Origin: Macrostomum lignano
Taxonomy: Eukaryota
NCBI GenBank assembly: GCA_002269645.1
Contig: NIVC01004237.1
Location: forward strand, 1 to 23,904
Direction of reading: 5' to 3'
Length of the DNA stretch: 23,904 nt
The notes beneath the pieces are model-generated. The model saw only the letters and a program-made list of their open reading frames with translations, was not told where the DNA came from and made no database searches. A program made the translations under genes and the position numbers. Below, piece after piece: positions 1 through 17,651 of this stretch (the first letter of the stretch is position 1; each line of letters opens with the position of its first letter).

Positions 1-215
1 CCGTGTCGCCTCCGTTGCCGTCGCCCACCCGAAGCCAGTCCGTCAAGTCCGTTCAAGTCTAAGTTGTTTCGCCTGGCCTCTCGTAGCTAACATCGAATAA
101 CAGTAGTTCATGCGCGTTGTCGTGACCGCAACTGCTAGGCAGATCGGTGTCAGTCGGCGCCGATGCCAGCGTATCGTCGTCCACAAAATCAACGTGCGCG
201 TAGTGAATGCTGTTC

Positions 216-632
216 TCAATGTCCACTTGTTTGCCGGAGTGGCGAAAATATTTGACTGTTGAATTTCGGACAGTAGGCTTGGAATTCTTCAACCATGTCC
301 TGGTTGGGTGCGCGATTAACAATGGTCTTACATCTCCGTGTGAGTTGCATTCCATGCGGGGCCACAGAATTCGTGTCTGGTGTATGAATATTTGCCTGGG
401 GCTTGTTCAGAGAACCAACTCCAAAACCCTGGCACTGAGGAAGTGAGCCCTTGAATTTTTGCGGTTCCCTAAAGCCACAGCTACACAAGTACAGAGACAT
501 GAGGGGCGCACTAAAGATGCACTGCAGCCCGACTTTGTCTGCCATGGGTCGAGCAAAAATATCCCAATATGTGGATTCAAATTTGATGTAGCTACGCCTG
601 GAATCGAGCGAAAGCCTTCTGGCCCAAGTCCT
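216..632 (-). CDS. G-alpha-like gene, exon with helical-domain-like sequence (3' end uncertain)
   Basis: Acceptor tatcag|AGG at 632, phase 0, matches the upstream donor. KFESTYWDIFARPMADKVGLQCIF resembles Gq-type [22 protein letters not shown]. The frame stays open to a stop at 216, but similarity fades after ~45 codons. Confidence 0.5.
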   Translation of the reverse strand, partial: RTWARRLSLDSRRSYIKFESTYWDIFARPMADKVGLQCIFSAPLMSLYLCSCGFREPQKFKGSLPQCQGFGVGSLNKPQANIHTPDTNSVAPHGMQLTRRCKTIVNRAPNQDMVEEFQAYCPKFNSQIFSPLRQTSGH

Positions 633-728
633 CTGATAGATAATTTCTAGAATTTCGAAAAAGTCCCTTTGACCAACAACAGCTGCAATCAAACTTTGAT
701 GTAGAATAAAAAACCGCTACCTTCCTAC

Positions 729-913
729 CTTGATGTAGGGATCGTGAAACCAGATGTCCCTAGTGCGCATATTCTCCAGCACAATGTGCACCGCATCTGC
801 TAGATTCTCCAGCACCTGACCGATCAGCGCCTTGCGTTGCTCGTCCGGGAATGCGTCTCCGTAGTGAATTCGAAACTGTTTCACTAACGTACTCTTGCCG
901 CATCCGTTGCCGC
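729..913 (-). CDS. G-alpha-like gene, P-loop exon
   Basis: cttag|GC...AAG|gtagg. Encodes (G)GNGCGKSTLVKQFRIHYGDAFPDEQRKALIGQVLENLADAVHIVLENM...DPYIK, aligning to G-alpha GAGESGKSTIVKQMxIxH. The phase-1 intron splits the P-loop Gly as in animal G-alpha genes. The exon is 185 nt, the length I recall for GNAQ exon 2. Confidence 0.85.
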
Positions 914-1234
914 CTAAGTTAATGTCAAAAAGTGAAATCTGGATTAAACGTTAATATACGTTTTGGTTGAAAAAAACTTGGCAGTTAAAAAATCTAAAGG
1001 AATAGCGCTATGTAACGGATAATATGAATGAATACTGTCATTTTAATTTCATAAAATTAAACTTAAATTAAACTTCAGCATAAACTTAAACTTAATAGTG
1101 AGACACTCTTTTATTGATAGACACACTTATAGACTGTATACACATTTTAGCCTGTCGAGAGACGCACTACAGATGCCGTGAGACACGTTCCGAACTCTCA
1201 AAAGGGCACTTTAGACTGAGGTAAAAACACTTTG

Positions 1235-1748
1235 TCGAGAGACACACTTCAGATTGCGACAGACACACTTCATGCTGTGGTAGACACACTTCATGCTGTG
1301 GTAGACACACTTCAGGCTGTGGTAGACACACTTCAGGCTGTGGTAGACACACTTCAGGCTGTGGTAGACACTTCAGGATATGGTAATCACACTTCAGGAT
1401 ATGGTAGACACACTTCAGGATATGGTAGACACACTTCAGGCTGTGGTAGACACACTTCAGGCTGTGGTAGACACACTTCAGGCTGTGGTAGACACACTTC
1501 AGGCTGTGGTAGACACACTTCAGGATATGGTAGACACACTTCAGGCTGTGGTAGACACACTTCAGGCTGTGGTAGACACACTTCAGGCTGTGGTAGACAC
1601 ACTTCAGGCTGTGGTAGACACTTCAGGCTGTGGTAGACACACTTCAGGCTGTGGTAGACACACTTCAGGCTGTGGTAGACACACTTCAGGCTGTGGTAGA
1701 CACACTTCAGGCTGTGGTAGACACACTTCAGGATATGGTAGACACACT
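1235..1748. repeat. 21-bp minisatellite (CTGTGGTAGACACACTTCAGG)n in G-alpha-like intron
   Basis: Over 20 near-identical tandem units; explains the AVVDTLQ / CLPQPEV ORFs. Confidence 0.95.
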
Positions 1749-1836
1749 TAAGACGTCGAGGTATTTGGAATTATTAGATGTTTAAGAAAGAAACTGTTTT
1801 AACGTGTGTCGTGTTGTACTAGAGTAAAAAACAAAC

Positions 1837-1966
1837 CAATCAGCAGCAGGTGAATCTCCTTGCGCTTGGCTTCCTGGTCAGTCAGCAACAGCTGGTCAAT
1901 TTGCTTCGAACGCATCAGAGCCCTCTTCTGAGCCAGCTTGTTGATGCTGTTAAAATGATCCGATAT
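1837..1966 (-). CDS. G-alpha-like gene, alphaN helix/beta1 exon
   Basis: ttacag|ATA...ATT G|gtttg. Encodes ISDHFNSINKLAQKRALMRSKQIDQLLLTDQEAKRKEIHLLLIG, matching G-alpha (A..RSK.ID..L..D.....E.KLLLLG). Splices in phase to the 729-913 exon. Confidence 0.85.
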
Positions 1967-2820
1967 CTGTAAGAAGTTTTGATGCGAGTTGAATAAGAGA
2001 TCTCTAAGTCCTCAGCGGGTGTCTCTTGCGTGTACCCAGGTATCTGCCAACCAGACGTGAGTTGACGGAGAAGGACTGTTTGGCGCTTTTTAAATCCTCT
2101 GCAGAAACCGGCTCGTAACTCGAGCCGTCATCATTTCCTTAACACACTGAATTTGGCATTTCGCACTATAGATTGTTGGAATCGAAGAATAGGGAAGAAA
2201 ACTACGAGCTAGTTGGTATTCCCAACCACTACTCATTTTCCTAAGCACCCCACGCCGAATTTATTCCAATATATATTTGCTTATCTTCTAATCAAATATA
2301 GCTATAATGCGTGCCATAACTCAAAATAGAAAATTTAGTACTGGATAATTGAATTTCAATCGCAATTAGGGAACAAGCGTTGTTATATGCTTATAAAAAT
2401 ATGCGCGTTTCCCATCCTTTTTTCATAGTCAATTTCTTTATCTCTTCTTCAGCATAATTGGGCGCCCCAATGTTCTATAGGGGAATTAATACGGCCGAGC
2501 AATTGATAGTTTTGAAAAAGAATTGTTTGATTGCAATCTTATTGACTTGTATTCATATTTGATCATTATTTATAGTTACAGTCGGCTACAGCTACCTACC
2601 AGTGATGAAATGACATTGAGAACTTATCCCTACTGACATCTCAACCTTCATCCCTAATGAAATCTCGTCTTTATTGATATTGAATCTCCACTGAGCTCTT
2701 ATATTCACGGAAGTATAATCTTTACCTTCACCTTAACTCTATTTCTTTCTCATGTTATCTACTAATATCTGATCTCTAGTGAGATCTCATCTCTACTATC
2801 ATGGCATCTTCACTGACAGC

Positions 2821-3081
2821 TTTTTATTACACCTGCCTTAATAGGCAGATGTAGCTCGTACAACCGGCCATTGTGGCACGCATCTGAAGGCTGTTTGCGG
2901 CTGTTGAGTCTAAAATCTGTGGTTTGCCATCGCCACACAAGCCCTCAATTACCCCAGGTAATGCTGTCATCCATTTTACAGCTGGGTGAACTGAAGCAAT
3001 GCAGAGTTGAGGTGTCTTTCTCAAAGACACAAGTTGTTCCGAGTGGGTCGAGAACCGAATCCCCTAACCAGTAGGCTACAA
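2821..3081 (-). mobile_element. tRNA-derived CORE-like SINE, copy 1 (diverged, anticodon arm deleted)
   Basis: Reverse complement matches the copies at 4241 and 10725 (TGTAGCCTACTGG head; CAGTTCACCCAGCTGTAAAATGG core; 3' hairpin and A-rich tail). Confidence 0.85.
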
Positions 3082-3131
3082 CCCCCCCCCCCTCTGCTTG
3101 ATGCACATCTTGTGGCCTCCGATCTACTTAC

Positions 3132-3514
3132 TTTTTTACTTGTGTGCCTCTTGGACGATGCGATAGCAACCAGACTGGCCTTCTTAGCCAGCACCCGTCT
3201 GCCTCCAGCCACTCCGCCGCTGCCGCTCCGCCGCCACCATGGCTCGAAAATCTCTTGCTTCCGCCAATAACTGTACCGGCTCTTCTTAGCTTTCTCCTTC
3301 GCTTGTTGTTGCTGCTGCTGCTGTTTGAGGCTGCCGCTGGTGCCGATGCTGTTGCTGACAGTGCCGTAGTGACTGCAGCCGTCGATGAAGAAGTTGAAGC
3401 CTCCTCTACTATGGTAGCATCGATCGTGTCTCCTTGTGTCACCGTCGGCTTTTGCTGCTTCCATTCGTCGTCGTCTTTTGGTACGAGGCAGATTCGTTCC
3501 TCATTGTCGCTCAT
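3132..3514 (-). CDS. Probable first coding exon of the G-alpha-like gene (low-complexity N-terminal extension)
   Basis: GC-rich ORF MSDNEERICLVPKDD... ending at a perfect donor AA|GTAAGT (3131). I could not resolve an in-phase join to the 1966 exon; a small exon near 2050-2140 and/or an indel is needed. Confidence 0.45.
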
Positions 3515-4240
3515 CTTTGCGGAGGAAATCCGACAGCTGGTTTAGTGGGCTGGCCAGCTCTCGTTTGTAAACTGTATTGCCGGTGTCAGATTACAGCGGA
3601 TTTTCCTGCCGCAATGCTAAAATATTAAAGGCCATTTGTTGGCTGCGTCTCAAGGCCTATCACACCAGCTTTCGATTTTATTCGCCCGTGCTCGACTGTG
3701 TGTACCTTCGACTGACGCACCTCGTCCTTCCTTTTTTCCTTTTCTTCCCCTTTCTCCCTCGTGTCAAGGAGGCCCACAGCTAGAACTTGGCGTGCTAGGA
3801 TTGAGTAAACAAATAAAAACGCAAAAAACAAGAACCTTCCTCTATCCCAGTCTGCGAGTTTCTGACTGTTTCGAGTCATTTTGTTTGAACTTTTAAGTAT
3901 AAAGTACTTAAATCTGGAGGTGTAAAAATTGGATTGGTTCAGATTAGAAACTAAAGTGTGTAGAAAATCATGCCAAAAACACAGAGAAAACATTTTAAAA
4001 TGACAGTGTGGTAATTGGGACATGCCAAGGTTCGTGTGGGAAATGCTGAGATGTCAAGGCTCATTGGGGGGAATTGCTGAAATTCTGTGGCTCTTGGTGG
4101 TTACTCAGATGTTTTGAGCCAAAAAAACTCATAGGGAATCTCATATCTTCAGCTAGATAGCTGTTTCTCAAGACTGATGCTGCTTTCCTTTAAACATCAT
4201 TTTCCTGAAGAGATTAGCAATACTGACTTGACTGTACTAC

Positions 4241-4510
4241 GGCTGTTGTAGCCTAGTGGTTAGAGCGTCGGACTCACAATTTGAAGGTCAGGGGTTCGAT
4301 TTCCGATCCCACTGAAACAATTTGTGTCCTTAAACAAGACACTTAACTCTGCATTGCTTCAGTTCACCCAGCTGTAAAATGGGTGCCAGCATTAGCTGGG
4401 GTAATTGAGGCTGTGTGTGTGGCGACTCCCCAGTCCTTGGACTGAACAGCCGTACGCAACCTTCAAATGCGCCGCGAAATAGCTGCGGCTGAGCTGTCGG
4501 TTGCACATCA
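4241..4510 (+). mobile_element. tRNA-derived CORE-like SINE, copy 2 (3' truncated)
   Basis: A box TAGCCTAGTGG, B box GGTTCGATT, then TGTGTCCTT..CAAGACACTTAACTCT...CAGTTCACCCAGCTGTAAAATGGG, resembling the MIR CORE. Confidence 0.9.
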
Positions 4511-5470
4511 AAATACTTACATGTAGTTACTTACATATAGTTTACTCAAAACTGTTATTCCTTTCTTTGTTGCGTCACCAACAGAAGGAGCGCAGATTGC
4601 TAGTTCCTTAAACACAATTAACTGCATTCTGAGCAATATAAATGCGACCTAGTAATAAAAGAGAAGTTAAAAGACACTAAGCTACAATCAAGTTTTATAG
4701 TTGTCCAAAAATGTAAGGCTTGAATAAGAGTTGTCAGTCCAAGTTCTGAGTCTCCTTGCCCTCTCCCAACCACCTCCTCATTCTTATGCACTGTCATTAT
4801 CTCCCATTGAAAAGCAAACCGAACAAAATTCAATCCCAAGCCCCTGCAGTCTTCTCCCTTCTATGTATTATTATATACACGCTCGTATATAAATCAGTGC
4901 CTCTTTGCAACCAATCAACTCTTCGAACCGGTCGAAGCTCTGGAATTTGGTGCCTCCGCATTTTACTTTCTTCTATCTCTATCATTCCTATTCTATTTGA
5001 GTCTATACTGCTCAGAATCCCTATATATCACCCCTCACCATTTGCCTCTGGCCTATTCATTTCCGCCTTATTCTCATTCGGAACTTCACATTCCCCAGTT
5101 TCTTATAATTGCTCACTCGCTCTCTCTCTATCCGATCTAGCTCCTGTTGGTCTCTCTCTCTCTTTCTTTCCCATTTATGGCTCCCCCTCCCAACGATAAG
5201 ATGGGACAGCGCGAGTTTGGTGGCTTCAACCTCTATAGCTATGGGCATTTTAATCAAACTGCCAATGCGCTCAAGACTTTCGAATATAGAATCTATATAG
5301 TTCTTATAGTATAAGTGTGAGCGCTATCGATGCCGCGATTGAATGGGTCCTATCTATCTCACTACTGTCTGACACTTTGCCTCCATTCGATTCATTAACC
5401 CCCCTCCCCCATAGCAACCCCAAACTTCGTCGCTCGGCTTCTTATCGACAGGCAAATTAATCTTCTCCCT

Positions 5471-5573
5471 CTACGGCAAGAGAGAAGGACGATCGGTCTT
5501 ATATGGAACTGGAGCTGGGATTCTGTGTTTAGCGACTGGGGCCGCTTCATCATCATCTTGTTTAAAGTACCCA
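5471..5573 (-). CDS. NLR-like gene, probable terminal exon
   Basis: Donor AA|GTGAGG at 6004 and acceptor acag|T at 5573 join in phase 2 across an AT-rich intron, giving N-GYFKQDDDEAAPVAKHRIPAPVPYKTDRPSLLP-stop. Confidence 0.6.
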
Positions 5574-6004
5574 CTGTCTTAAATTTTCATTTAAAACCAA
5601 CCAAGTGTAAAAACTATTATTCACTTGTTTATATTTTTTCTAGAAAAATTGACAAGAACTTTTCCTGTTAGTCTGTTACAAAGCTGTCTGTTAAAAAATT
5701 GAAAATTATATTGTATCATTTAGCTTAATGTTATTATAGAGAATAAATAAACTTAAAACAATACTGTATGTTTTACGTACAGTTTTTACTTTAGAAAAAA
5801 TATCTTTGTCTCAGTAAGATATCGCTTAAATTCTAGGATTTCTCGTTCTGTGCAAACAGTTACAAAGTTCTTGTGGGCCGTATTAACGAAGGAGGGCAGT
5901 GCTAAACAAAAACTATTCACAACTTTTAAAAAGTTATTGAAATTCACTGTTATTTGATAATAATAGTTAGGATGCGTCTTCATCATCGGCCATGGTTTCC
6001 TCAC

Positions 6005-8539
6005 TTGACTGACAGCGGGTTTCTCTTAGTATTGGCCCTCTCGTTCGTCGGTCTCTGCCGATACTCCACCCCGATGCCGTCCACGACCGCCCGATTCTTG
6101 CGCGTCTCCGTCTGGCTCTCCTCGCCCAGAACCCGGCGACCCTCCTCGCTGACGACCTCCTGCGTGACCGTGAGAAGTTTCAGCATCTTATTAATCTTTA
6201 GAATTCTAGCCACCTCTTTGCAAGCTCTCGTGTCCATTGGCACCTGGCGTAAGAATAGCTTCTCAAGCTTGTTATTAATTTTCAGCGCTTCGGATAGAGA
6301 GAAGAAGCAGACATTGTCCAGGCGGATTCCGCTCAAATCCAGCAGGACAATGGTCCGATTGCTAGAGAATGCGGCGATGAAAGTGTTAAAGGCCATCGCA
6401 TCAATCTTGAGGTTAGCCAAGATCAGGCCTTCTAGACTCTTGCTCTCCATCAGCTTTCCGTTGAGATCCTGCGATGCCACTATGCTCATCTGGCAGCCAG
6501 AAAAGTCTAGAATGCGCAGGTTGTCCGCAAATTTAGTTGGCAAATTTTTTATTATGCTTCCAACCAGCGACATGTGGTGACAATTTTGAAATGCGAACGT
6601 TTCTAGTTTAGTCATGTTCGAGCAGGCTTCGCGCATGTTGTTTAGCATTTTTGGCGACAACTGGTCCAGCTTCTTTCCTGACTCGTCGATGCACTCAAGA
6701 TTCTTCAGATGAAAGCCGGTCTGATCGGGCTTCTTACGCCTGATTTCCATCTGGCCTGTAGAATTGGCGGGGTCCTCTGGCTCCGGACAGCACACGGTTT
6801 GAAGGAAGTCTGCCATTAGATCCTTCTCTGTCCAGTAGATGCGGAGCGTCTTGATGTGAACGTTCGTTTTCATTGCGGTAGCCAGACTTTTGTATGCCTC
6901 AAGCGTCTCTTTGGCTAGCAGATCTAGGCGCAAGTCCACCTCTTGGATGGTCGTGTGGTTAAACTTGATCATCTTGGACAGGCCTGTAAGCGACAATCTC
7001 GGAATGATGCCCTCGTGCTTCACGGTGAATCGCTCTGGCAGCGATTCAACAATTTTCTTGCCAAGATCTCTGCGGGCCATGTCCATGACCGCCACGCATT
7101 CCAGACTGAGCTGGTAGTCCATGATCTTGCCCTCGACCAGTTGACTGTCTTCTGGCGACGTAGCCGCTGGCATTTTCATGCGACTCGCTTTGCCTCGCCG
7201 TTTGTTATACTGCAGTATCTTTGCAAACAGTTCCCGGGTGGCCGGCGTGTCGTTGTCCGACTTGCGGATGCTGCAGTAGAACACAACAACATTGTAGGAG
7301 ATCGGAGTCATACTCATGTTCTGGAAGAAGCGGCTAGCTTCATCTGTTCCACTAGTGTCTAGATTTTTCGCGGCGAGATACTCTTGAATAAGACGATTGC
7401 CAAACATGTAGCGCTGGTTATCCTCTGCGGTGAGGTTTGTAGCCAGTTGAATCAGGCCGAACTTAGTCATCATGTGGTCCTCCTTGGCCAAAATGAAAGT
7501 TGCGCTGCCTTTCTTTATGGTGTCCATAGCGCGTTCGGACAGCATTGCGTAGGCGCGATTCGCTTCGAAGCGACTCTCCTTTTCGCGTTCGATCAGCTTC
7601 AACTTGATGCAGGAGACAAACTGTTCCACAATTGTTGTCGGAGAGTTCAGATCGATACTCATGCGCATGTCGGTCAGCAGGCAGAAGAACGAACAGTACA
7701 AAGGCACCTGTGAGTAATGTCGCAGGGACGCTATTTTGCTTTGATTTGAATTTTCACCGTTTGAATCCTGTTGTTGCTGCTGATCGTTTCCTTGACCCTT
7801 GCTAGAGCTGCGGCTTAGTTTTGTGCTGACTTTGTCCGTGTTTTCCCTCTCCAAAGGTCGCTCGTCTCTGGGCTTTGCCGAGGTCACAGATGTCGCCGAT
7901 TCTGACGACCCGCGTCGCCTCTGCGGCTCCTGCGACTTTTTCGCTGCATCCAGCAGCTTTTGAAGCTCAGTTGATTTTTTTGCCACTACTAGCTTGTTTA
8001 GAAACGAGGAAAAGTGTTCCCACGGCTTCTTAGCTAGTTTGACGTACTTCTGAACGTACTCCTCTGCCTGGGATTTGGCGAATCCGGTCAGAATTACCTT
8101 GCGCTGGTAGCGGTGCATCAGTCTGACTGTAAAGTTAGTCTGACTAAATACCAGAATGTGCAGTTCCGGCATGATGTTCTCAAATAGCAAACTCTTCATC
8201 TCATCATTTAGATTGTCTTCGTAGCCATCTATGATGAGCAGTGTGCTCGCCTGGTGCATGTTCATCACCTCCCAAATTTCGCGTTCGGCCAGCTTGCAGT
8301 CGCCTCCGAAAAGCTGTTCCATCATCATCACTTTCACTGTGGGCGCTGTTACTTTAAGATCAAGCAAGATTAGCAGTTGGAAAGGCCGTCCGAATACGTT
8401 TTCGTCCAAAGACCATTTGTAGGCCATATACTTAGCCAGCGTACTCTTCCCTGTTCCAGGGTCACCCTCAATAACTACTGTATGCGGGTCTTTTTCGCCT
8501 TCCTTATAATCAAAAACTTGGAAGGCGTTGACTGACTTT
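6005..8539 (-). CDS. NLR-like gene, NACHT-WHD-LRR exon
   Basis: Acceptor gcag|A at 8539. Walker A GDPGTGKS (8443-8466), Walker B LLIIDGYED, ILTGF, VPLYC, QEYLAA, then RI-type LRRs (LRILDFSGCQM, LEGLILANLKI, IVLLDLSGIRL, LEKLFLRQVPM). No frameshifts. If unspliced, it stops at 6001. Confidence 0.93.
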
Positions 8540-8616
8540 CTGCAATTTTAAATTGAGAAATCAAAGTTGAAAATTATGTCTTGCTTAATGATCTGATCTG
8601 TTTTCCTGCTACTTAC

Positions 8617-8758
8617 CCATTCAAATTGAGCAGCTGCTGTTGGCAGTAGAATTCGGCAATGTCTGTTTCAACTTTAGTGTACCATGGAATCGGATTCCAT
8701 TTGGCGTACGCGGTGGAGTACCGCTCTCGAAGAATGTTGTTACAGTAAGGTAGACCCT
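8617..8758 (-). CDS. NLR-like gene, pre-NACHT (FISNA-like) exon
   Basis: ttcag|AG...GG|gtaagt, phases 1 and 2 match both neighbours. Encodes GLPYCNNILRERYSTAYAKWNPIPWYTKVETDIAEFYCQQQLLNLNG, with the PxPW motif typical upstream of invertebrate NACHT domains. Confidence 0.88.
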
Positions 8759-8835
8759 CTGAAGAAACAGAAGAAACAGAAAAATCCTGTGATCAACTCT
8801 TAGAAGAGGATTTACTAATTATTATAAATACTTAC

Positions 8836-9970
8836 GTGGTTTATTAGCAAGGATGTCGGCCTTAGCGGCCTGGTAGTCCTGGTGCATCTGCTGGTACACC
8901 TGTTCGTTCTTGGGTTTCAGCGATTCAACGAACTCATCCAACACATTGCCAGATTTTGGCACTAGAAAGTCGATCAACGTCGACATCTGCTCGTTGTTGC
9001 GCAGAGTAGAAAATATTTCCGTGCTCTCGTCTTGGGTAATAATCTCCTTGTTCATCAGATGCTCAACCACTGTGTCCGCTTTTACATCGTTGAGCAGCTG
9101 TTCGTAGTACTTGTCGAGAATTAGGCGCTCCGCTAATACCATGCCAGTTTTGATATGAGCCCATCTCTGACAGCGCGACTTGTCGCTCATGTCCATCGTC
9201 GCCTTTCCAACAACCGACTGGCGTTTTTTCGTTTCCGACGTGTCCAAATCGCGCGTCTTGAGCCGTTTCTGCAGAATAGGAATCTCTTCGCGCTTCTTCT
9301 TTCGTTCTTGGTTTTCGATTTCTCTCTTCAACTGGCTGACCTCTTGGCGGTACCAGACGAGGAATTCGCCCAGAATGAAGCGCGATTCAGTCTCGTCCAT
9401 GCTAGTGTCCTGCTTGTATGCGTTCATACAGTCTGCTGCACCCGAGTGTCCCAGTCGCTGGAGCTGCTCGGCAATGCGGCTAAACAGTCTGTTAGCTGCG
9501 CTCGCCTTTAAGGTCTGCAGCGAGGCGAGCTCGCGTTGAATGCCCAGTAGGCGTTGCAGCGCTGCGCCCTGGCTGTCATCGCGAGGTTCCGGATCTCCCA
9601 TCCAGCCGTTTGGCTGCGGCTTCGTCACATCGCAGGTGTATTTTACTAACAGGAGCAGCAGACGCAGGTCGTAGTTGTCAGCGGACACGGAAGATTTCTC
9701 CTTCGGGTAGAGCGTCTGCCAGTCGTCTTCGGTTAGCATGTCTTTGATCTTAAGTCGCCTCAGCGTCCGGTGAATGTCCGGCGAGGCCAAGTGTTCCGTT
9801 AGCTCGTCCGTTGGATGCTTGGAATCGAATAGGCTTCTCAAGCACGCCTTGCCCTCTCGCATGAGAAAGTGGCACACCTGGATAGGTTCTCTACGCTCCT
9901 CTCGTCGGTCATGTCCAACTGCAGCTTGGGCGTGTTGTCTACCACGCCGAACTGAAATTTTGGATGTCAT
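8836..9970 (-). CDS. NLR-like gene, HEPN(DZIP3-like), coiled coil and CARD-like exon
   Basis: Donor C|GTAAGT at 8835. LRSLFDSKHP...WQTLYP...YDLRLLLLLVKYTC...NGW..P...D resembles DZIP3-type HEPN. LDKYYEQLLNDVKADTVVEHLMNKEIIT...LIDFL...DEFVESL resembles a CARD. The exon may begin at the acceptor at 9951 rather than the ATG at 9970. Confidence 0.88.
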
Positions 9971-10033
9971 TAACCAATGTTAAAATGCAACATTTTAGTA
10001 AAGTATCCAACAGTTAGACAGTTAGTAACTCAC

Positions 10034-10121
10034 AACCACTTGATTTTTCGGCCGAGCGGCCAAGGTCATTCGACGAACTTCTGGCATCCTCAGCTGTGAG
10101 CTGCAGGTTTTCTGTCAGCTT
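10034..10121 (-). CDS. NLR-like gene, candidate upstream exon
   Basis: taacag|AAG...T|GTGAGT, open frame KLTENLQLTAEDARSSSNDLGRSAEKSSG; phase 1 fits the acceptor tttcag|TT at 9951. The start codon lies further upstream and was not identified. Confidence 0.5.
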
Positions 10122-10724
10122 CTGTTAAGCTCAGATTTCAACTACTCAGATATTGGGCTTTAGTCTTTACTCTAAACTTCTATCTTTGTTAGCAGGTGAA
10201 AAAGCATGAAGATTTAAGAATTTTTATCTCTTTCTCTTGCTCTTCTGCTCAAGCGCACTTGCAGCCCAGCCCTCCTTGTTGAGTAGCTCTGGAAAGCTCT
10301 GAGCTCTATTGTTAGTCCGTCTCTTATGCCCTCGACACCCCCGTTAGACTCGAATAGCTCTGTGCTCTGTGCGCTGGAGACATGAAAGCTGTTAAAAGGC
10401 GGTGCGCGTTGCGTACTTTGAATGCATCTGTTCTCAAATATTTTCATTCTACTCTGCAGAGATTTACTGCGTGTGCAAAGATGTGGCTGTCTACTGTGTT
10501 TCTTCTGCTACCATTTTGCGCTGAGGAGTTTGTCTTATAAGACGCAAAATGGTAGAACAATAAAAATGCTCCTGCGTGTGTACGAGGGGGTCTATTCTAT
10601 CTTACAGACTCAGTTTTGTTGCCAAGGTGATGCAACACACTCTCGCGTACACACTTCTACGTACAATGTACTGACCCTCTGTTGCACTTTGTCTCCTGTG
10701 GCATATATTTATTGTATATTACTT

Positions 10725-11040
10725 GCACTCTGTAGCCAGTGGTTGGAGCGTCGGACTCACGACTTGAAGGTCGGGGGTTCGATTCCTGATCTCACCGGAA
10801 CGATTTGTGTCCTTTAGCAAGACACTAAACTCTGCGTTTCTTCAGTTCACCCAGCTGTAAAATGGGTGCCAGCATTAGCTGGGGTAATTGAGGCTGTGTG
10901 TGGCGACCCCCCCCCCCAGGTCCTTGGACTGAACAGCCGTACGCAGCCTTCAGATGCGCCGCGCAATATCTGAGGCTGAGCTGTTGGTTGCACATCTGCC
11001 CATTTAGGGCAGGTGTAATCAATTATAGTTTTATTATTGT
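10725..11040 (+). mobile_element. tRNA-derived CORE-like SINE, copy 3 (near full length)
   Basis: A/B boxes, core nearly identical to copy 2, 3' hairpin at 10992-11016, AT-rich tail. Confidence 0.9.
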
Positions 11041-11193
11041 GCTTTATAATTGTCTGAAAGCTGAAAATGTTATTAGCGCACAATGCGTACTTAGGGACAA
11101 ATTAGCACAGAGTCTTGCTCGAACAAGATAAAAATTCGATTTCGGCTCAACAAAATGAACCAAGATATTACTGCTTATTCCTCCATCAACCAG

Positions 11194-11337
11194 ACCCTGC
11201 ATTCGTCGAATTCTCGAGCGCGACTCTCCGCCCAGCTCGCGTCTAGCACTGCAGGTGGTCAGTCTGCGATGGAGCAGCAACTCGGACAGAACAGAGACTG
11301 GAAAGCAGCCGCGCAACAGCAGCAGCAGCAGCTCAAG
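11194..11337 (+). CDS. BRCA2: BRCA2 exon (helical domain/OB1 junction)
   Basis: ccag|A CCC TGC: PCIRRILERDSPPSSRLALQV matches human [21 protein letters not shown]. The 3' end is ambiguous: either a donor GTCAGT at 11258, or a 1-nt indel near 11265 and donor AAG|GT at 11338. Confidence 0.75.
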
Positions 11338-11434
11338 GTTCACTTTGCTGGCTTTGCATTTTATTAGGAAACTCCGGCTTCTATTCAATCCTTGCTGCCA
11401 TTGCCCTGTCAGACTGTGTGTATCCTCCCCTCCC

Positions 11435-12012
11435 CTCTACCTGTTTATGTCTCCCCTCTACCTGTCTGTGTCGCCACTCTACCTGTCTGTGTCTCCCCTC
11501 TACCTGTCTGTGTCTTCCCTCTACTGTCTGTGTCTTCCCTCTACCTGTCTGTCTTCCCTCTACCTGTCTGTGTCTCCCCTCTACCTGTCTGTGTCGCCAT
11601 CTACCTGTCTGTGTCTCCCCTCTACCTGTCTGTGTCTCCCCTCTACCTGCCTGTGTCTCCCCTCTACCTGTCTGTCTTCACTCTACCTGTCTGTGTCGCC
11701 ACTCTACCTGTCTGTGTCTCCCCTCTACCTGTCTGTGTCTCCCCTTTACCTGTCTGTGTCTCCCCTCTACCTGTCTTTGTCTCCCCTCTACCTGTCTGTG
11801 TCTCCCCTCTACCTGTCTGTGTCTCCCCTCTACCTGTCTGTGTCTCCCCTCTACCTGTCTGTGTCTCCCCTCTACCTGTCTGTGTCTCCCCTCTACCTGT
11901 CTGTGTCTCCCCTCTACCTGTCTGTGTCTCCCCTCTACCTGTCTGTGTCTCCCCTCTACCTGTCTGTGTCTCCCCTCTACCTGTCTGTGTCTCCCCTCTA
12001 CCTGTCTGTGTC
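11435..12012. repeat. 21-bp minisatellite (CTCTACCTGTCTGTGTCTCCC)n in BRCA2 intron
   Basis: Tandem units, diverged at the left and homogeneous at the right; explains the PLYLSVS / LPSTCLC ORFs. Confidence 0.95.
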
Positions 12013-12138
12013 TGGCCGTCTGACAATTGTCTCGCCAGCATTTTTCTCTGCCTATACTATTTACCACTTGCTACTGTTGGTCAGTAGTTTATAAGCAGCG
12101 TGTGATCATTTGACGCATTAATTAGTTTCCCGATTTAG

Positions 12139-12597
12139 GTGACCCTCACGGACGGCTGGTACTGCATCGGCGCACAGCTGGATCCCCTGCTGTGCCGCGC
12201 AGCCTCCGCCGGCCTCATCAAACCGGGCACCCGGCTGCTCACCTGCCAGGCTGAACTGATTGGCTGCTCTGAGGCCTGCCAGCCGCTGGAAGCGCCGGCC
12301 AGCGCCGCTCTCCGTCTCCATGGCAACAGCACCCGACGCTGCGTTGCCAACCGAAGAGTCCGGCTGGGCTTCGCCGACGCCTCGCCGATGCCGGTGTCGC
12401 TCAGCTCACTGCGGCCCGACGGCGGCAAGGCTGGCGCTCTGCACCTGTTCGTCAGCCGGCGGTACCCCCGGCAGTTCATGGAGCGCAGCCCTGGCAGCGA
12501 CGCCAGGGTGTTCCGCGGGGCTCGAGCCGAGGACCGACGGGCCAGGGAGTTCGAGGCTGAGGCCCGCCGGCGAATGGAGGAAGCTGTGGAGGACCAG
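12139..12597 (+). CDS. BRCA2: BRCA2 exon (OB1 and start of OB2/Tower)
   Basis: tttag|GTG...CAG|gttggt. VTLTDGWYCIGAQLDPLL...AELIGCSEACQPLEAPASAALRLHGNSTRR...SLRPDGG...RRYPRQFME matches human ELTDGWYAVKAQLDPPL...[29 protein letters not shown]...SLFSDGG...RAYPIQWME. Confidence 0.95.
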
Positions 12598-12611
12598 GTT
12601 GGTGGCTGCTT

Positions 12612-13056
12612 CCAGTTGCTGGGCCGCCAGCCTCCCAGATCCCCAGTTGCTGGACCAGACTCCCAGATCCCCAGTTGCTGGACCAGACTCCCAGATCCCC
12701 AGTTGCTGGCCAGACTCCCAGATCCCCAGTTGCTGGGCCGCCAGCCTCCCAGATCCCCAGTTGCTGGACCAGCCTCCCAGATCCTCAGTTGCTGGGCCGC
12801 CAGCCTCCCAGATCCTCAGTTTGCTGGACCAGACTCCCAGATCCCCAGTTGCTGGGCCAGACTCCCAGATCCCCAGTTGCTGGGCCAGACTCCCAGATCC
12901 CCAGTTGCTGGGCCAGACTCCCAGATCCCCAGATCCCCAGTTGCTGGGCCAGCCAGCCTCCCAGATCCCCAGTTGCTTGGCCAGACTCCCAGATCCCCAG
13001 TTGCTGGGCCAGACTCCCAGATCCTCAGTTGCTGGGCCGCCAGCCTCCCAGATCCC
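12612..13056 (+). repeat. ~28-bp composite minisatellite (CCAGTTGCTGGGCCAGCCTCCCAGATCC-like) filling a BRCA2 intron
   Basis: Tandem variants between the donor at 12598 and the acceptor at 13077; same family as 23022-23425. Confidence 0.93.
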
Positions 13057-13077
13057 AACACCGCATCCCAATTTCAG

Positions 13078-13461
13078 CTGGGCTCCAAGCCCCCGCAGCA
13101 GCGCGGCCGTCTCTACCAGCCTGATGAAGTGTCCCAGCTGAGCACCGGCGAGGAGCTTCAGGCCGCCCTGCGCTCCGCCCTGAACGCGGACGAACTGCAG
13201 GCCTGGCTGACGGAGCGTCAGCGAGACGTCCTGACTCGGCACCGGGAGCAGCTGCTGCCGCCGCTCGTCCAGCAGCGTCAGGTGACGCCGCTGGTTCGCC
13301 TGCTGGTCATCGGCACCGAGGACGCCGACTTGGACGAAGGCGCCGTGGCCACCCTGACTGTGTGGAACCCGGAGGAGGGCGCCGAGTCCTGGCTGCGCGA
13401 GGGCTGCGGCCTGCTGGTGCTCGGGGCGAATGTGGGATCCGCTGCTTCCGGCGGGCATCGG
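13078..13461 (+). CDS. BRCA2: BRCA2 exon (three-helix bundle and OB2)
   Basis: tttcag|CTG...CGG|gtgcga. VSQLSTGEELQAALRSALNADELQAWLTERQRDVLTRHREQL and RQVTPLVRLLV...LTVWNP...LREG match human LQDGAELYEAV...EEQLRALNNHRQML and RDVTTVWKLRIV...LSIWRP...LTEG. Confidence 0.88.
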
Positions 13462-13497
13462 GTGCGATTTTGTCGGGTGGGGGGGGGGGTTGGTTGC

Positions 13498-14030
13498 TAG
13501 GAAATCGCTCATAGGGTCATCGTGTTTTTAGGAAATCGCTCATAGGGTCATCGTGTTTTTAGGAAATCGCTCATAGGGTCATCGTGTTTTTAGGAAATCG
13601 CTCATAGGGTCATCGTGTTTTTAGGAAATCGCTCATAGGGTCATCGTGTTTTTAGGAAATCGCTCATAGGGTCATCGTGTTTTTAGGAAATCGCTCATAG
13701 GGTCATCGTGTTTTTAGGAAATCGCTCATAGGGTCATCGTGTTTTTAGGAAATCGCTCATAGGGTCATCGTGTTTTTAGGAAATCGCTCATAGGGTCATC
13801 GTGTTTTTAGGAAATCGCTCATAGGGTCATCGTGTTTTTAGGAAATCGCTCATAGTGTCATGGTTTTATAATGAAATCCCTCATAGGGTCATGATGTTAT
13901 AAAGGAATCGCTCATAGGGTCATGGTGTTATAAGAGAATCGCTCATAGGGTCATGGTGTTATAAGAGAATCGCTCATAGGGTCATGGTGTTATAAGAGAA
14001 TCGGTCATAGGGCCATGGTGTTATAAGGGA
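13498..14030. repeat. 31-bp minisatellite (GAAATCGCTCATAGGGTCATCGTGTTTTTAG)n in BRCA2 intron
   Basis: About 11-12 near-perfect copies to ~13860, then diverged ~32-bp copies. Confidence 0.95.
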
Positions 14031-14107
14031 GTCGTTTATCTCTCACAGATCCCAGCTAAGTCTCCAACAGGAAATCTCTTATTCGTTGCCATCACCCGGA
14101 CACGCAG

Positions 14108-14449
14108 ATGTCTCTGAACCTCAGCCGCGGCGGCCTTATCCGACCCCTGGAGCTCGGGCAGCGCGCCGACCTCATCCTGACGCGGCACCGACCTCGCAGT
14201 TTCCTCCGCCTGCCCTTGCCGCCAGCACAACACGCCGGTGCAATCATCGACAACGAATTAGACCTCCGCGGCCTGCTTGTCGCCGTGTGGGACGACGGCC
14301 GAATGATGGCGGTGCTGGCCGATCCGGAGCGTTGCGACGGCGACGGCGACTGCGGCAGCGCCGGCCTCGTCTGTGTCCGGGTCTGGGCTGGCCTGGCCAG
14401 TCTGGCCTGGCCGCTCACGGGCAGACCGCTTGCCGCCTTCAACCTGCAG
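14108..14449 (+). CDS. BRCA2: BRCA2 exon (OB2 end and OB3)
   Basis: cgcag|ATG...CAG|gtgggg. NELDLRGLLVAV...LVCVRVWAGL...LAAFNLQ matches human SEVDLIGFVVSV...LLAIKFWIDL...IAASNLQ. Confidence 0.88.
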
Positions 14450-14479
14450 GTGGGGCTGCTGATGGCCTGCGGTTCCTAC

Positions 14480-14630
14480 TGCTTCTCTCCCCTCTCCCTC
14501 TCACCCTCCCCTTCCCCCCTCACCCTCCTCTCACCCTCCTCTTACCCTCACCCTCCTCACCCTCCTCTCACCCTCCTCTTACCCTCGCCCTCTCACCCTC
14601 TCCCGCCCCGCCACCCAATTTTTATTGCCT
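14480..14630. repeat. C/T-rich low-complexity tract in BRCA2 intron
   Basis: Degenerate CCCT/CACCCTCCT units. Confidence 0.8.
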
Positions 14631-15046
14631 TCCTCGGTTGTTCCAGCCTAAATCTGCCATGTACATTTCTGTGGCCAATGTACATTATGACTGAACCAAT
14701 TAGCAAGCTGTTTACGCGCCTGCAAGCTTGGGCTTCTAAGCTTATCAAAGTCATTTCAGCTGCCTTTATTCTTATAAATTATGACTAGCTTATGTATTCT
14801 CCATTGCTACAGGACTGAAGTACTATTAGAAAAACAGCTGTTTTGCTAAGTATAAATGCCTGAGTGGCCAATCTAGTTATTCTAGTCTCCCTGTTGTCAG
14901 GCCTGATGAATAAGTATACCGGTAGACTATGGAAAATCGGCAATCTACCCAAATATTTCCTGGGCACTGGGTGTCTCTCCCTCTGTTCCCCTCTGCCTCC
15001 CATTCCCATGCCCTGTCAGCTCAGCAACTCAATATTTCTGCTCCAG

Positions 15047-15607
15047 CGCCGCTCAACCGGCGCCGAGGTGCTGCCCGGCCTGCCGCTGCTGCACTTCACC
15101 GATCTGAGCGACCTGTCAGCCTTGAACCCGGCCGACCTGCCCAGCTCGTTCCGCTCAGCTTTGAACTCGTCATCGACTCTGATAAGCAGGGCTCGGGAGT
15201 TTCTGTCTGGCCAGCTGGGCCTCGGCCTGCCCGACCTGGAGCCCGTTGCCATGCCAACCACGCCAGCCTCTTCTAATAGAAACCAATCCCTACTGCAGCG
15301 GCACAGATTTGTCGATAGTCCGACATTGACGCGTCAGATTGCCGGCGGCAGCGGCGTCCGACAGCCGGGCTTGCGTCGGTCGATCGGCTTCAAGAAACAG
15401 CAGCAGCAGACTCCTTCGTCTAGCGACAATAAAGAACACGCAGCGCTGGTTGCTACTACCAGTAGCATCAGTAGTAGCTGTTGCGGCGTGGGTAATTCGA
15501 GAAAGCGTCGGAGTCAAGATTCGATTGTCGGCGCCGATGGCGACGGCGGATTCGACGGGTCGTCTGCGGCGGCGGCGGCGGGCGCCGGGATTCGCAAGCG
15601 TCGCTAG
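15047..15607 (+). CDS. BRCA2: BRCA2 last exon (OB3 end, disordered basic tail)
   Basis: ctccag|CGC in phase 0. PGLPLLHFTDLSDLSALNP...FRSAL resembles human SGLLTLFAGDFSVFSASP...FQETF. Ends GIRKRR-stop (NLS-like) and may extend to 15681 if there is an indel. Confidence 0.82.
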   Translation, partial: RRSTGAEVLPGLPLLHFTDLSDLSALNPADLPSSFRSALNSSSTLISRAREFLSGQLGLGLPDLEPVAMPTTPASSNRNQSLLQRHRFVDSPTLTRQIAGGSGVRQPGLRRSIGFKKQQQQTPSSSDNKEHAALVATTSSISSSCCGVGNSRKRRSQDSIVGADGDGGFDGSSAAAAAGAGIRKRR

Positions 15608-15849
15608 ACGTGTCCATCGCTGATCTGGTGAAGACCAAGCGAAGGTCGCTGGCGGCCAGGAGTCCCAGCGTTGGCAACTAGGGACTGTGAGAAATGGACC
15701 GACTTCACAACTGTGTTGTTCGTGTTGGCAATGAGGATTCTTAAATACTGTTTGTGAGGAATTCCCTATCGACTGTTCATTGGGGATTTCTAAATTGTTT
15801 ATGGGAACTTCCTACGAAGTTTATAATGGGTGTTTATTGGTTTATAAAT

Positions 15850-16780: not shown

Positions 16781-17399
16781 TTTATGTAGGTATATTTAAA
16801 CAGTTTATGGGTGGCTTAAGAGTATATAGTTTTTGGAGGACTATGAAACTGTTTATTTGAAAGTTGTGAGAGGTCATTAAACAGTTTATAGAGAATCCCA
16901 TGAGTCTTGAGTGGAAGATGCATTCAACAGATTAAACAGGACTTTTCAAACAAAGATCATTATAGATATCGTTCAAGGCGCGGAAGAGCATCAGGTCCCA
17001 AACGTTGAAATTGAGGTTTTCAAGAGTTTTTTTTCAATTTTTTCTGGTCTTCTTTTGTTGCTCGGCATCTTACCACCAGCTTGTAGCCTCTCATTTTTTC
17101 AATTTCTTTAAAGCCTTTTTCTGCTTTGCATTTCCAATTGCATTGATTTTCTGTCAGTTCGTTGCATGTCTTTATTATTTATCTTCGGTACCGACCTTGC
17201 CGCTGTACTCGCACACAGCATGGCAGGTGCTGTTCAGCTTTTTAATATTTCTTGCATAAGTACGAAAGTTTTGCATGCGTAACACCCCAAATAAAAACTT
17301 TTTGTGAATTCAAACCGAAAGCCATCTGTTTTTTTCTAATGTCTGTTCTTTTTAAAACGCAGCTCTCTTTTGCTCGCTCTGTGACTTATTTCGCCTGAA

Positions 17400-17419
17400 G
17401 ACAGACAGACAGACAGATT

Positions 17420-17451
<32 letters not shown>

Positions 17452-17462
17452 CACACACACAC

Positions 17463-17501
<39 letters not shown>

Positions 17502-17613
17502 CACAGACAGACAGACAGACAGACAGACACACAGACAGACAGACAGACAGGCAGACAGACACACACACAGACACACACAGACAGACAGACAGACAAACAG
17601 AGACAGGCAGACA

Positions 17614-17651
<38 letters not shown>

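What the first reader, a model, noticed from the sequence alone, without database searches (positions are those of the whole stretch)
5471..10121. Intact NLR with tandem HEPN-like and CARD-like N-terminal domains (HEPN-CC-CARD-NACHT-LRR)
Seen: four to five phase-compatible exons encode ~1300 aa with no frameshift. Known: HEPN_DZIP3-NACHT-LRR proteins occur in marine invertebrates and CARD-NACHT-LRR is the NOD/NLRC layout, so each pairing alone has precedent. Inference: two effector-type modules in tandem, separated by a charged coiled coil (EVSQLKREIENQERKKKREE), is an unusual layout and may define a lineage-specific innate-immune or cell-death receptor. This is the best candidate for a new system in the window.
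Basis: partly seen in the sequence, partly recalled or inferred. Interest (0 to 1): 0.8.

Follow-up and report, generated by a model that had tools for sequence, protein, structure and literature searches.

The report
Flatworm HEPN-CARD-NACHT-LRR immune-type receptor gene
This is a real, essentially intact NOD-like receptor gene of the flatworm Macrostomum lignano with HEPN, CARD, NACHT and leucine-rich-repeat modules, but the same layout is found in many other invertebrates, so it is not a new system.

Summary
The domain calls are correct. Three minus-strand coding exons (9970-8836, 8758-8617, 8539-6001) give a stop-free 1271-aa product. It carries HEPN_DZIP3 (E 2.5e-17), CARD (6e-9; predicted fold TM 0.89 to Apaf-1 CARD), NACHT (4.6e-15, Walker A and B intact) and about 11 ribonuclease-inhibitor-type LRRs.

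The organism is Macrostomum lignano. The gene is already annotated (BOX15_Mlig026612g2) with these Pfam domains.

The layout is neither unusual nor lineage-specific. Colinear orthologues at 21-26% identity (full-length alignment) have the same four modules in a brachiopod, a nemertean, two annelids, gastropods and a scallop. There are also fragments in a monogenean flatworm. Aplysia's only NACHT-plus-LRR protein was already described as having Death-like and DZIP3-HEPN domains.

Two corrections to the finding:
- The HEPN domain has lost the catalytic RNx3-5H motif in all 14 HEPN-CARD-NACHT sequences scored (8 species-level orthologues plus isoforms). It is probably not an RNase effector.
- A 1-bp deletion at about 9879, relative to both reference copies, puts the annotated start exon (10087-10034) out of frame. 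Every domain still survives from a downstream ATG.

Between copies there are 9-10 synonymous changes against 1 non-synonymous, which indicates purifying selection.

Verdict: a new member of a known kind, of modest interest.

The parts
10034..10087 (-). 5' exon of the reference gene model (ATG at 10087, MPEVRRMTLAARPKNQVV). It is out of frame with the body in this window.
   Evidence: The same exon set translates to P0001 in L001 and L002 but stops at codon 56 in the window.
9952..10033 (-). Intron 1 of the reference model (GTGAGT...TTTCAG, 82 nt). The window lacks 2 bp (AT) at about 9959 and carries an ATG at 9970-9968 that is in frame with the body.
9878..9880 (-). Site of a 1-bp deletion (GGG to GG) relative to both public copies. 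It frameshifts the annotated N-terminal 43 codons.
8836..9970 (-). Large coding exon, open from ATG 9970. The reference exon 2 starts at 9951. It encodes HEPN, the helical linker and CARD in one uninterrupted frame.
9389..9805 (-). HEPN_DZIP3 domain (residues 56-194 of the 1271-aa model).
   Evidence: E 2.5e-17, 63 bits. AF2 pLDDT 80-88, all-helical.
9518..9538 (-). Degenerate HEPN active-site position (residues 145-151, QRELASL). Gln replaces the catalytic Arg, Arg replaces Asn, and the His column is deleted.
   Evidence: Alignment with canonical RNxxxxH members. Motif census.
9266..9325 (-). Charged segment EVSQLKREIENQERKKKREE. It sits within a predicted long single helix (residues about 193-239) that runs into a disordered linker. 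It is not conserved among orthologues.
8879..9118 (-). CARD (residues 285-364).
   Evidence: E 6e-9. The orthogroup profile matches RAIDD CARD at 6.7e-10. Foldseek to Apaf-1 CARD gives TMt 0.89 and rmsd 1.3-1.5 A.
8759..8835 (-). Intron (GTAAGT...TTCAG, 77 nt).
8617..8758 (-). Small coding exon holding the conserved pre-NACHT motif (Y..Y.K..PIPW).
   Evidence: Invariant Y, P and W columns.
8540..8616 (-). Intron (GTAAGT...TGCAG, 77 nt).
6001..8539 (-). Last coding exon: NACHT, helical domains and LRRs. The TGA stop is at 6003-6001.
8038..8484 (-). NACHT NTPase (residues 445-593). Walker A GDPGTGKS is at nt 8466-8443. Walker B LLIIDGYED is at nt 8241-8215.
   Evidence: Orthogroup profile against NLRC4 gives 8e-39.
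7753..7935 (-). Low-complexity Ser/Gln/Arg-rich insertion after the NACHT domain. It is specific to M. lignano and predicted to be disordered.
   Evidence: about an 80-column gap in all the other orthologues. (pLDDT below 50).
6079..7134 (-). Leucine-rich-repeat domain of ribonuclease-inhibitor type, with about 11 beta-strand/helix units. The last five are clear 28-residue repeats.

Best explanation
The locus is the Macrostomum lignano copy of a conserved invertebrate NOD-like receptor that appears to be about single-copy per species. Its order is N-terminal DZIP3-type HEPN domain, variable helical/disordered linker, CARD, NACHT NTPase with helical domains, then ribonuclease-inhibitor-type LRRs.

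Shown here:
- All four modules are present and in one frame.
- Walker A and Walker B are intact.
- The NACHT-LRR part is predicted to fold like closed, ADP-state NOD2 and NLRP3.
- The CARD is predicted as a death-fold bundle like Apaf-1 CARD.
- The HEPN domain lacks the Arg-Asn...His catalytic motif.
- The gene has been under purifying selection since the copies diverged.

Inferred from how solved NLRs and apoptosomes work:
- The LRRs and helical domains hold the NACHT domain in an ADP-bound off state.
- A cytosolic ligand or perturbation releases it, and nucleotide exchange drives oligomerisation.
- The clustered CARDs nucleate a CARD-bearing caspase or adaptor, giving a cell-death or inflammatory-type output.
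- The HEPN domain is most likely a non-catalytic module. It could bind RNA or a ligand, mediate dimerisation, or contribute to autoinhibition. It is unlikely to be a second nuclease effector.

In this window a 1-bp deletion removes the annotated first 43 codons from the frame. If the deletion is real, the product would start at Met37 or at the ATG at 9970, with all domains kept.
For: - Gene model and ORF.
- Pfam domains.
- Identity with BOX15_Mlig026612g2, and about 99.2% DNA identity to two M. lignano contigs.
- Colinear orthologues with the same Pfam set in 7 other taxa.
- Local HMM census: among the 150 best hits plus cluster members, HEPN+CARD+NACHT occurs only in this orthogroup and in one amphioxus model.
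- CARD.
- NACHT-LRR: pTM 0.75; NLRP5 2e-47, NLRC4 8e-39, ribonuclease inhibitor 4e-37; NLRP3 closed form TM about 0.6, NOD2-ADP TMt 0.62.
- HEPN motif loss: 0 of 14 HEPN-CARD-NACHT sequences have RNx3-5H at the catalytic position. 13 HEPN-NACHT proteins without CARD do have it.
- Purifying selection: 9-10 synonymous against 1 non-synonymous difference (V to I) over 3723 nt. Synonymous sites 814, non-synonymous sites 2909, so dN/dS is about 0.03.
- Walker motifs.
Against: - No expression, ligand, partner or phenotype data exist. No paper in the held library mentions this gene or Macrostomum NLRs.
- Structures are predictions from shallow alignments of 8-9 sequences, with mean pLDDT about 74.
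- HEPN inactivity is inferred from motif loss only. A non-canonical active site cannot be excluded.
- The 5' frameshift could lower or abolish translation of this particular copy, or it could be an assembly error.
- About one copy per species and strong conservation are atypical for fast-evolving pathogen sensors. They fit a conserved ligand or a housekeeping role equally well.
Confidence: 0.6

Rival explanations
1. Dual-effector receptor. On oligomerisation the HEPN domains dimerise and act as an RNase, while the CARD recruits a caspase or adaptor. That would give two outputs from one sensor.
For: - HEPN_DZIP3 membership is solid.
- In cnidarian and bivalve HEPN-NACHT proteins the RNx3-5H motif is kept and RNase function is widely predicted (PMC3710099).
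- An amphioxus model has HEPN with RNKYYGH, then CARD, then NACHT.
Against: - In this orthogroup the catalytic His column is deleted in all 14 sequences, and the Arg is lost in several, including M. lignano (Gln).
- The only R..H pattern inside the domain (RSLFDSKH, residues 45-52) sits in helix 1. It is also present in canonical members that have the true motif elsewhere.
Confidence: 0.07
2. A conserved non-immune role. The protein would be a housekeeping or developmental STAND scaffold, or a cell-death switch comparable to Apaf-1 or to the oocyte-lattice NLRPs, rather than a pathogen sensor.
For: - There appears to be one orthologue per species across several phyla, with no lineage-specific expansion seen among the hits.
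- Purifying selection is strong.
- The best structural and sequence matches include NLRP5 and NLRP14 of the oocyte cytoplasmic lattice, and the CARD is closest to Apaf-1 and RAIDD.
Against: - The PDB ranking among NLRs is not discriminating. NLRC4, NOD2 and NLRP3 score similarly.
- LRR-bearing NACHT proteins with a CARD are classically sensors.
- No expression data are available.
Confidence: 0.2
3. This particular copy is a 5'-damaged allele or paralogue on its way to becoming a pseudogene. Alternatively, the indels are assembly errors and the copy is identical in structure to the reference.
For: - The 1-bp deletion in a GGG run at about 9879 and the 2-bp deletion at about 9959 are both absent from the two independent public contigs. 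The four-exon splice stops at codon 56.
- Homopolymer indels are a typical long-read assembly error (general knowledge).
Against: - The other 3.7 kb of coding sequence has no stop or frameshift, and 9-10 of the 10-11 differences are synonymous.
- An in-frame Met37 lies upstream of all the homology to orthologues, which begins at residue 40 of the model.
Confidence: 0.12

Closest known systems
Macrostomum lignano BOX15_Mlig026612g2 (P0001; UniRef name 'CARD domain-containing protein'), on contigs NIVC01003379.1 and NIVC01004146.1
   Same: Same gene. The protein is 100% identical in the best local alignment over 98% of the query, with one V/I substitution in the body. The DNA is about 99.2% identical. 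The precomputed Pfam set is the same: HEPN_DZIP3, CARD, NACHT.
   Different: The window has a 1-bp and a 2-bp deletion near the 5' end, so the annotated start exon is out of frame. It also has 9-10 synonymous differences.
Spiralian orthologues: Lingula anatina XP_013410021 ('NLRC3-like'), Tubulanus polymorphus XP_074650995, Owenia fusiformis CAH1778043, Capitella teleta ELT89336, Lottia gigantea ESO97594, Mizuhopecten yessoensis OWF40290 ('NLRC4-like'), Haliotis spp. ('NLRP13-like')
   Same: Full-length colinear alignment with HEPN_DZIP3, CARD, NACHT and LRR in the same order. They share the PPYPNGW signature, the loss of the HEPN His motif and the pre-NACHT motif.
   Different: Only 21-26% identity in the full-length alignment. 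M. lignano has an extra low-complexity insertion of about 80 aa after the NACHT domain and weaker LRR consensus. Haliotis lacks the Walker A lysine.
Aplysia californica NLR-like protein (PMC9334734)
   Same: Described as the only Aplysia protein with NACHT plus LRR. [quoted passage not shown] That is the same module set.
   Different: Its sequence was not retrieved here, so orthology is inferred, not tested.
Cnidarian and bivalve HEPN_DZIP3-NACHT(-LRR/TPR/WD40) expansions (PMC8260672, PMC9646362)
   Same: An N-terminal DZIP3-type HEPN domain in front of a NACHT domain, often with LRRs.
   Different: These are large lineage-specific expansions (17-83 per cnidarian species, more than 50 in the pearl oyster). 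They have no CARD between HEPN and NACHT, and the catalytic RNx3-5H motif is usually kept.
Vertebrate CARD-type NLRs (NOD1/NOD2, NLRC4)
   Same: The CARD, NACHT, helical domains, RI-type LRR layout. The predicted fold superposes on NOD2-ADP (TMt 0.62) and NLRC4.
   Different: They have no HEPN domain. Subfamily orthology was not tested. The NCBI 'NLRC3/4-like' names are automatic.
Branchiostoma lanceolatum CAH1255554 ('NLRC5', 2143 aa)
   Same: Its second half has HEPN_DZIP3 (807-932), CARD (1114-1198) and NACHT (1395-1542).
   Different: Its HEPN domain keeps RNKYYGH and lacks the PPYPNGW signature. The model looks like two fused tandem genes. It is probably an independent domain shuffle.

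Membership tests
NOD-like receptor (NACHT-LRR STAND NTPase) | NACHT domain above the Pfam gathering score, with Walker A GxxxxGK[ST] and a Walker B acidic motif | tested here: met
   NACHT E 4.6e-15, 56 bits against 26.7. GDPGTGKS at residue 451 and LLIIDGYED at residue 526.
NOD-like receptor (NACHT-LRR STAND NTPase) | C-terminal leucine-rich repeats | tested here: met
   No Pfam LRR hit on this protein. However, phmmer of the window's C-terminus hits ribonuclease inhibitor at 9.6e-9. The orthogroup profile hits it at 4e-37. The AF2 model shows about 11 beta/alpha repeats.
NOD-like receptor (NACHT-LRR STAND NTPase) | Overall fold of NACHT, helical domains and LRR like solved NLRs | tested here: met
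   Foldseek E 1e-20 to 6e-24 to NLRP14, NLRC4, NLRP3 and NOD2, with TM up to 0.6. This is a predicted structure only.
NOD-like receptor (NACHT-LRR STAND NTPase) | Ligand-induced, nucleotide-dependent oligomerisation | not testable with these tools
   Needs biochemistry.
HEPN_DZIP3 (PF18738) | Profile match above the gathering score | tested here: met
   63.4 bits against 27, covering 3-140 of 144 model positions.
Catalytically active HEPN RNase | Rx4-6H motif (RNx3-5H in the DZIP3 family) at the start of the last core helix | tested here: not met
   Gln-Arg replaces Arg-Asn, and the His column is deleted. The motif is absent in 14 of 14 HEPN-CARD-NACHT sequences and present in 13 HEPN-NACHT relatives.
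CARD (death-fold superfamily) | Profile match and CARD-like helical-bundle fold | tested here: met
   Pfam CARD 36 bits against 23.9. Orthogroup profile to RAIDD 6.7e-10, also Apaf-1, CARD9 and BCL10. All top 50 Foldseek hits are CARDs or CARD-based designs, with TMt 0.89 and rmsd 1.3-1.5 A to Apaf-1 CARD.
CARD (death-fold superfamily) | Homotypic binding to a CARD partner | not tested
Spiralian HEPN-CARD-NACHT-LRR orthogroup (defined here) | Colinear full-length alignment, same four modules, His-less HEPN domain | tested here: met
Spiralian HEPN-CARD-NACHT-LRR orthogroup (defined here) | Monophyly in a NACHT phylogeny and one copy per genome | not tested
   There is only the pattern of one 50%-identity cluster per species among the hits. 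No tree or whole-proteome census was made.
Coiled coil between HEPN and CARD | Conserved heptad-repeat segment | tested here: not met
   The region varies in length and sequence among orthologues. In the model it is a single helix that fades into a disordered linker with pLDDT below 50. No dedicated coiled-coil predictor was run.
Vertebrate NLRC/NOD subfamily | Phylogenetic placement within the NOD1/2 or NLRC3/4/5 clades | not tested
   PDB profile scores are similar for NLRP5/14, NLRC4, NOD2 and NLRP3, so they do not discriminate.

The most novel reading that the evidence does not exclude
The gene represents an ancient spiralian NLR, about single-copy, in which a catalytically dead HEPN domain has become an RNA- or ligand-binding or autoinhibitory module upstream of a CARD output. 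It may also be the main or only NLR retained in flatworms. It is present in Macrostomum and in a monogenean, whereas Schistosoma is reported to have no NACHT proteins.
Probability: 0.25. Interest if true: 0.5.

Novelty: new member of a known kind. Interest (0 to 1): 0.3.

Why it matters
The case corrects an over-reading. The HEPN-CARD-NACHT-LRR layout is a conserved, already annotated invertebrate NLR type, not a flatworm invention.

Two modest points could interest comparative immunologists.
- This orthogroup, unlike the expanded HEPN-NACHT families of corals and bivalves, appears to be about single-copy per species and has lost the HEPN catalytic motif. This suggests the nuclease domain was repurposed once a CARD provided the output.
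- A free-living flatworm and a monogenean parasite keep it, although NLRs are considered scarce or absent in the flatworms examined so far.

M. lignano is amenable to RNAi and transgenesis, so function could be tested directly.

Tried and rejected
- The word-indexed protein search performed poorly. The full protein returned only the M. lignano entry and four weak NACHT hits. The N-terminal half alone returned nothing. The 8-sequence profile did not return the known orthologues. Orthologues came only from the exhaustive search.
- I tried to join the upstream ATG (10087) to the body with every donor position from 10030 to 10044. No canonical GT donor gives the right phase. This was later explained by the 1-bp deletion.
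- Gene-fusion artefact was considered and rejected, because HEPN and CARD share one exon.
- Pseudogene status was considered and judged unlikely from the synonymous to non-synonymous ratio.
- The R..H pattern at residues 45-52 was rejected as a catalytic motif, because it lies in helix 1 and is also present in canonical members. The R..H regex hit in fragment P0155 is also off-position.
- The sigma-70 promoter and terminator scan is irrelevant for a eukaryote.
- No AATAAA or ATTAAA signal occurs in the 700 nt after the stop codon.
- No tRNA or Rfam family is present in the window.
- Literature: nothing on Macrostomum NLRs or on Mlig026612. Zhu et al. 2022 on lophotrochozoan NLRs is not held. 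The planarian immunity review says nothing specific about flatworm NLRs. The Bcl10/paracaspase preprint does not mention flatworms.
- One search failed because of a wrong reading frame, and one search was lost.
- Most HEPN-only hits come from unnamed ENA or Logan contigs, so their taxa are unknown.

Full report
**1. What is in the sequence**

The region holds two long minus-strand ORFs, 8822-9970 (382 aa) and 6001-8427 (808 aa). Reading the minus strand shows two 77-nt introns with GTAAGT donors and AG acceptors, at 8835-8759 and 8616-8540.

Joining exons 9970-8836, 8758-8617 and 8539-6001 gives a 1271-codon frame with a single terminal stop.

Pfam on the spliced product:
- HEPN_DZIP3 at residues 56-194 (E 2.5e-17, 63 bits against a cut-off of 27).
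- CARD at residues 285-364 (E 6e-9, 36 bits against 23.9).
- NACHT at residues 445-593 (E 4.6e-15, 56 bits against 26.7).

In nucleotides these are 9805-9389, 9118-8879 and 8484-8038. HEPN, the linker and CARD lie in one exon, so their tandem order is not a modelling artefact. Walker A (GDPGTGKS) and Walker B (LLIIDGYED) are intact.

**2. The LRRs**

No Pfam LRR model reaches threshold on this protein. Three other lines show that the LRRs are real:
- The last 400 residues alone match ribonuclease inhibitor (E 9.6e-9) and NLRP LRRs.
- The sequence shows five clear 28-residue repeats at the C-terminus.
- An AlphaFold2 model of the NACHT-to-end piece (pTM 0.75, mean pLDDT 74) has about 11 regularly spaced strand/helix units.

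That model matches full-length NLR structures with Foldseek E 1e-20 to 6e-24. These include NLRP14, NLRC4, closed NLRP3 (TM about 0.6) and ADP-bound NOD2 (TMt 0.62). A profile of the orthologue alignment matches NLRP5 (2e-47), NLRC4 (8e-39) and ribonuclease inhibitor (4e-37).

**3. The N-terminal half**

An AlphaFold2 model of residues 37-440 has mean pLDDT 73. The HEPN part scores 80-88 and the CARD part 83-89. A disordered stretch (pLDDT below 50) lies between them.

All 50 best PDB matches are CARDs or designed proteins built on a CARD template. Apaf-1 CARD superposes with TMt 0.89 and rmsd 1.3-1.5 A. By sequence profile the best matches are RAIDD (6.7e-10), Apaf-1, CARD9 and BCL10.

The 'charged coiled coil' is part of one long predicted helix (model residues about 193-239) that fades into the disordered linker. 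The region differs in length and sequence in every orthologue. It is therefore not a conserved module.

**4. Source organism and annotation**

The protein is 100% identical over 98% of its length to Macrostomum lignano BOX15_Mlig026612g2. That entry is 1283 aa and UniRef names it 'CARD domain-containing protein'. Its precomputed Pfam set is HEPN_DZIP3, NACHT and CARD.

Two contigs of assembly GCA_002269645.1 carry it. The window is about 99.2% identical to both over 3936-12013, and 91-96% identical elsewhere. It is therefore a third copy, an allele, or another assembly of the same locus.

**5. Is the gene intact?**

The reference model has four exons. It starts at an ATG that corresponds to window position 10087 (exon 10087-10034, intron to 9952).

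Using those same four exons, L001 and L002 translate exactly to the 1283-aa protein. The window's version stops at codon 56. The cause is a 1-bp deletion in a GGG run at about 9879. A 2-bp deletion lies in the intron at about 9959.

The body frame has a Met (MREGKACL, Met37 of my model) three residues before the homology with orthologues begins. It is also open from an ATG at 9970, inside the reference intron. All domains would survive either way.

The rest of the coding sequence differs from the reference copies at 10-11 positions. Nine or ten are synonymous and one is a V-to-I change. With 814 synonymous and 2909 non-synonymous sites, dN/dS is about 0.03. The copy has therefore been under purifying selection. 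Whether the 5' indels are real or assembly errors cannot be decided here.

**6. Is the layout unusual?**

It is not. An exhaustive HMMER search of 1.84 billion representatives with residues 37-611 gave 928 hits. The top hits are full-length colinear proteins of 1098-1240 aa. Pfam finds HEPN_DZIP3, CARD and NACHT in all seven tested, with weak LRR_6 hits in four.

Their sources are:
- Lingula anatina (brachiopod)
- Tubulanus polymorphus (nemertean)
- Owenia fusiformis and Capitella teleta (annelids)
- Lottia gigantea and several Haliotis species (gastropods)
- Mizuhopecten yessoensis (scallop)

Each appears as one cluster per species. They align colinearly over all four modules at 21-26% identity.

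I built local HMMs from that alignment and ran them over all the retrieved proteins. HEPN+CARD+NACHT occurs in 15 sequences, all but one from this orthogroup. HEPN+NACHT occurs in 30 and CARD+NACHT in 8.

Two adjacent gene models on one 8-kb contig of the monogenean flatworm Cichlidogyrus casuarinus carry the HEPN-like region plus CARD, and the NACHT domain, respectively. Unnamed fragments at 39-52% identity (P0009, P0010, P0155) show the same order. An amphioxus model (CAH1255554) has HEPN, CARD and NACHT in its second half.

The literature already records these combinations:
- Anantharaman et al. 2013 list DZIP3-HEPN fusions to CARD, NACHT, DEATH and LRR (PMC3710099).
- HEPN_DZIP3-NACHT is the commonest non-LRR combination in many cnidarians (PMC8260672). 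It occurs more than 50 times in the pearl oyster (PMC9646362).

**7. The HEPN domain is probably not a nuclease**

Canonical DZIP3-type HEPN domains carry R-N-x3-5-H, for example YYRNTVYGH and FFRNKLYAH. I aligned the orthogroup with such members. The orthogroup has a 2-3-residue deletion exactly at the His position. M. lignano also has Gln-Arg in place of Arg-Asn (GIQRELAS-LQT).

I ran a motif census at that position. None of the 14 HEPN-CARD-NACHT sequences has the motif. Thirteen HEPN-NACHT proteins without CARD do have it. The amphioxus protein keeps RNKYYGH and lacks the PPYPNGW signature of the spiralian group. This argues for an independent shuffle there.

The 'two effector modules' reading is therefore weak. 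CARD is the likely output, and HEPN is a repurposed non-catalytic module.

**8. Most likely mechanism**

This is inferred from solved NLRs. The LRRs and helical domains keep the NACHT domain ADP-bound. A cytosolic trigger allows nucleotide exchange and oligomerisation. The clustered CARDs then nucleate a CARD-containing caspase or adaptor.

The apparent single copy per species and the purifying selection suggest a conserved ligand or a conserved cell-death or housekeeping role. They do not suggest an arms-race receptor. None of this has been tested experimentally. The held library has no paper on this gene or on Macrostomum NLRs.

**9. Verdict**

The claims of novelty and lineage specificity are not supported. 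This is a new, uncharacterised member of a known kind of NLR.

Two useful refinements come out of the analysis: the His-less HEPN domain, and the 5' frameshift in this copy. One mildly interesting phyletic point also emerges: the gene is retained in flatworms, whereas Schistosoma is reported to have no NACHT proteins. Interest 0.3.

Noticed in passing
window 4255-4509 and 10738-10996: A dispersed repeat of about 255 nt (two blocks, 90-91% identical, same orientation) flanks the gene on both sides. Short ORFs across it share the peptide HTQPQLPQLMLAPILQLGELK. It is probably a small non-autonomous mobile element. No tRNA-like or Rfam match was found.
   Followed up: partly
window 1240-1749, 11430-12013, 13498-14022, 15908-16809, 19474-19917, 21093-22192: The gene sits in a minisatellite-rich region. 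The arrays have units of 21, 21, 31, 23 (134), 27 and 44 bp, with 16-40 copies each. The long 'ORFs' at 11255-12094 (SPLYLSV repeats) are just the 21-bp array read in frame.
   Followed up: no
window 17399-18552: A 1.15-kb (AGAC)n microsatellite of about 295 copies. It explains the extreme AT skew in the composition profile and the spurious 400-440-aa ORFs there.
   Followed up: no
window 12612-13056 and 23024-23427: Two arrays of the same 28-bp unit lie in opposite orientation about 10 kb apart. They form a large inverted pair of minisatellites.
   Followed up: no
window 7753-7935 (minus strand; residues about 628-688): A Ser/Gln/Arg-rich low-complexity insertion between the NACHT domain and the helical domains. 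It is absent from all seven other orthologues and predicted to be disordered.
   Followed up: partly
P0014 (Haliotis orthologue), alignment A1 columns about 530-540: The abalone orthologue has GIGQTT instead of GxGK[ST]. The Walker A lysine is replaced, which suggests loss of NTP hydrolysis or binding in that lineage.
   Followed up: no
P0007 (Tubulanus orthologue), alignment A1 columns about 1000-1060: The nemertean orthologue carries a tandem SGVNRGITEL repeat (about 6 copies) inserted just before the LRR domain. This is a second example of lineage-specific low-complexity insertions in this protein.
   Followed up: no
P0020, P0023-P0025, P0028, P0030, P0034-P0037 (unnamed ENA/Logan/NCBI contigs): Many short proteins (190-420 aa) consist of just the His-less, PPYPNGW-type HEPN domain. 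They are either stand-alone paralogues or fragments of further orthologues in unsampled animals. No names or taxa are available.
   Followed up: partly
window 1-3909 and 12014-23904 compared with L001/L002: Identity to the two public contigs drops from 99.2% in the gene block (3936-12013) to 88-96% in the repeat-rich flanks, with many indels. The locus is structurally variable between copies.
   Followed up: no
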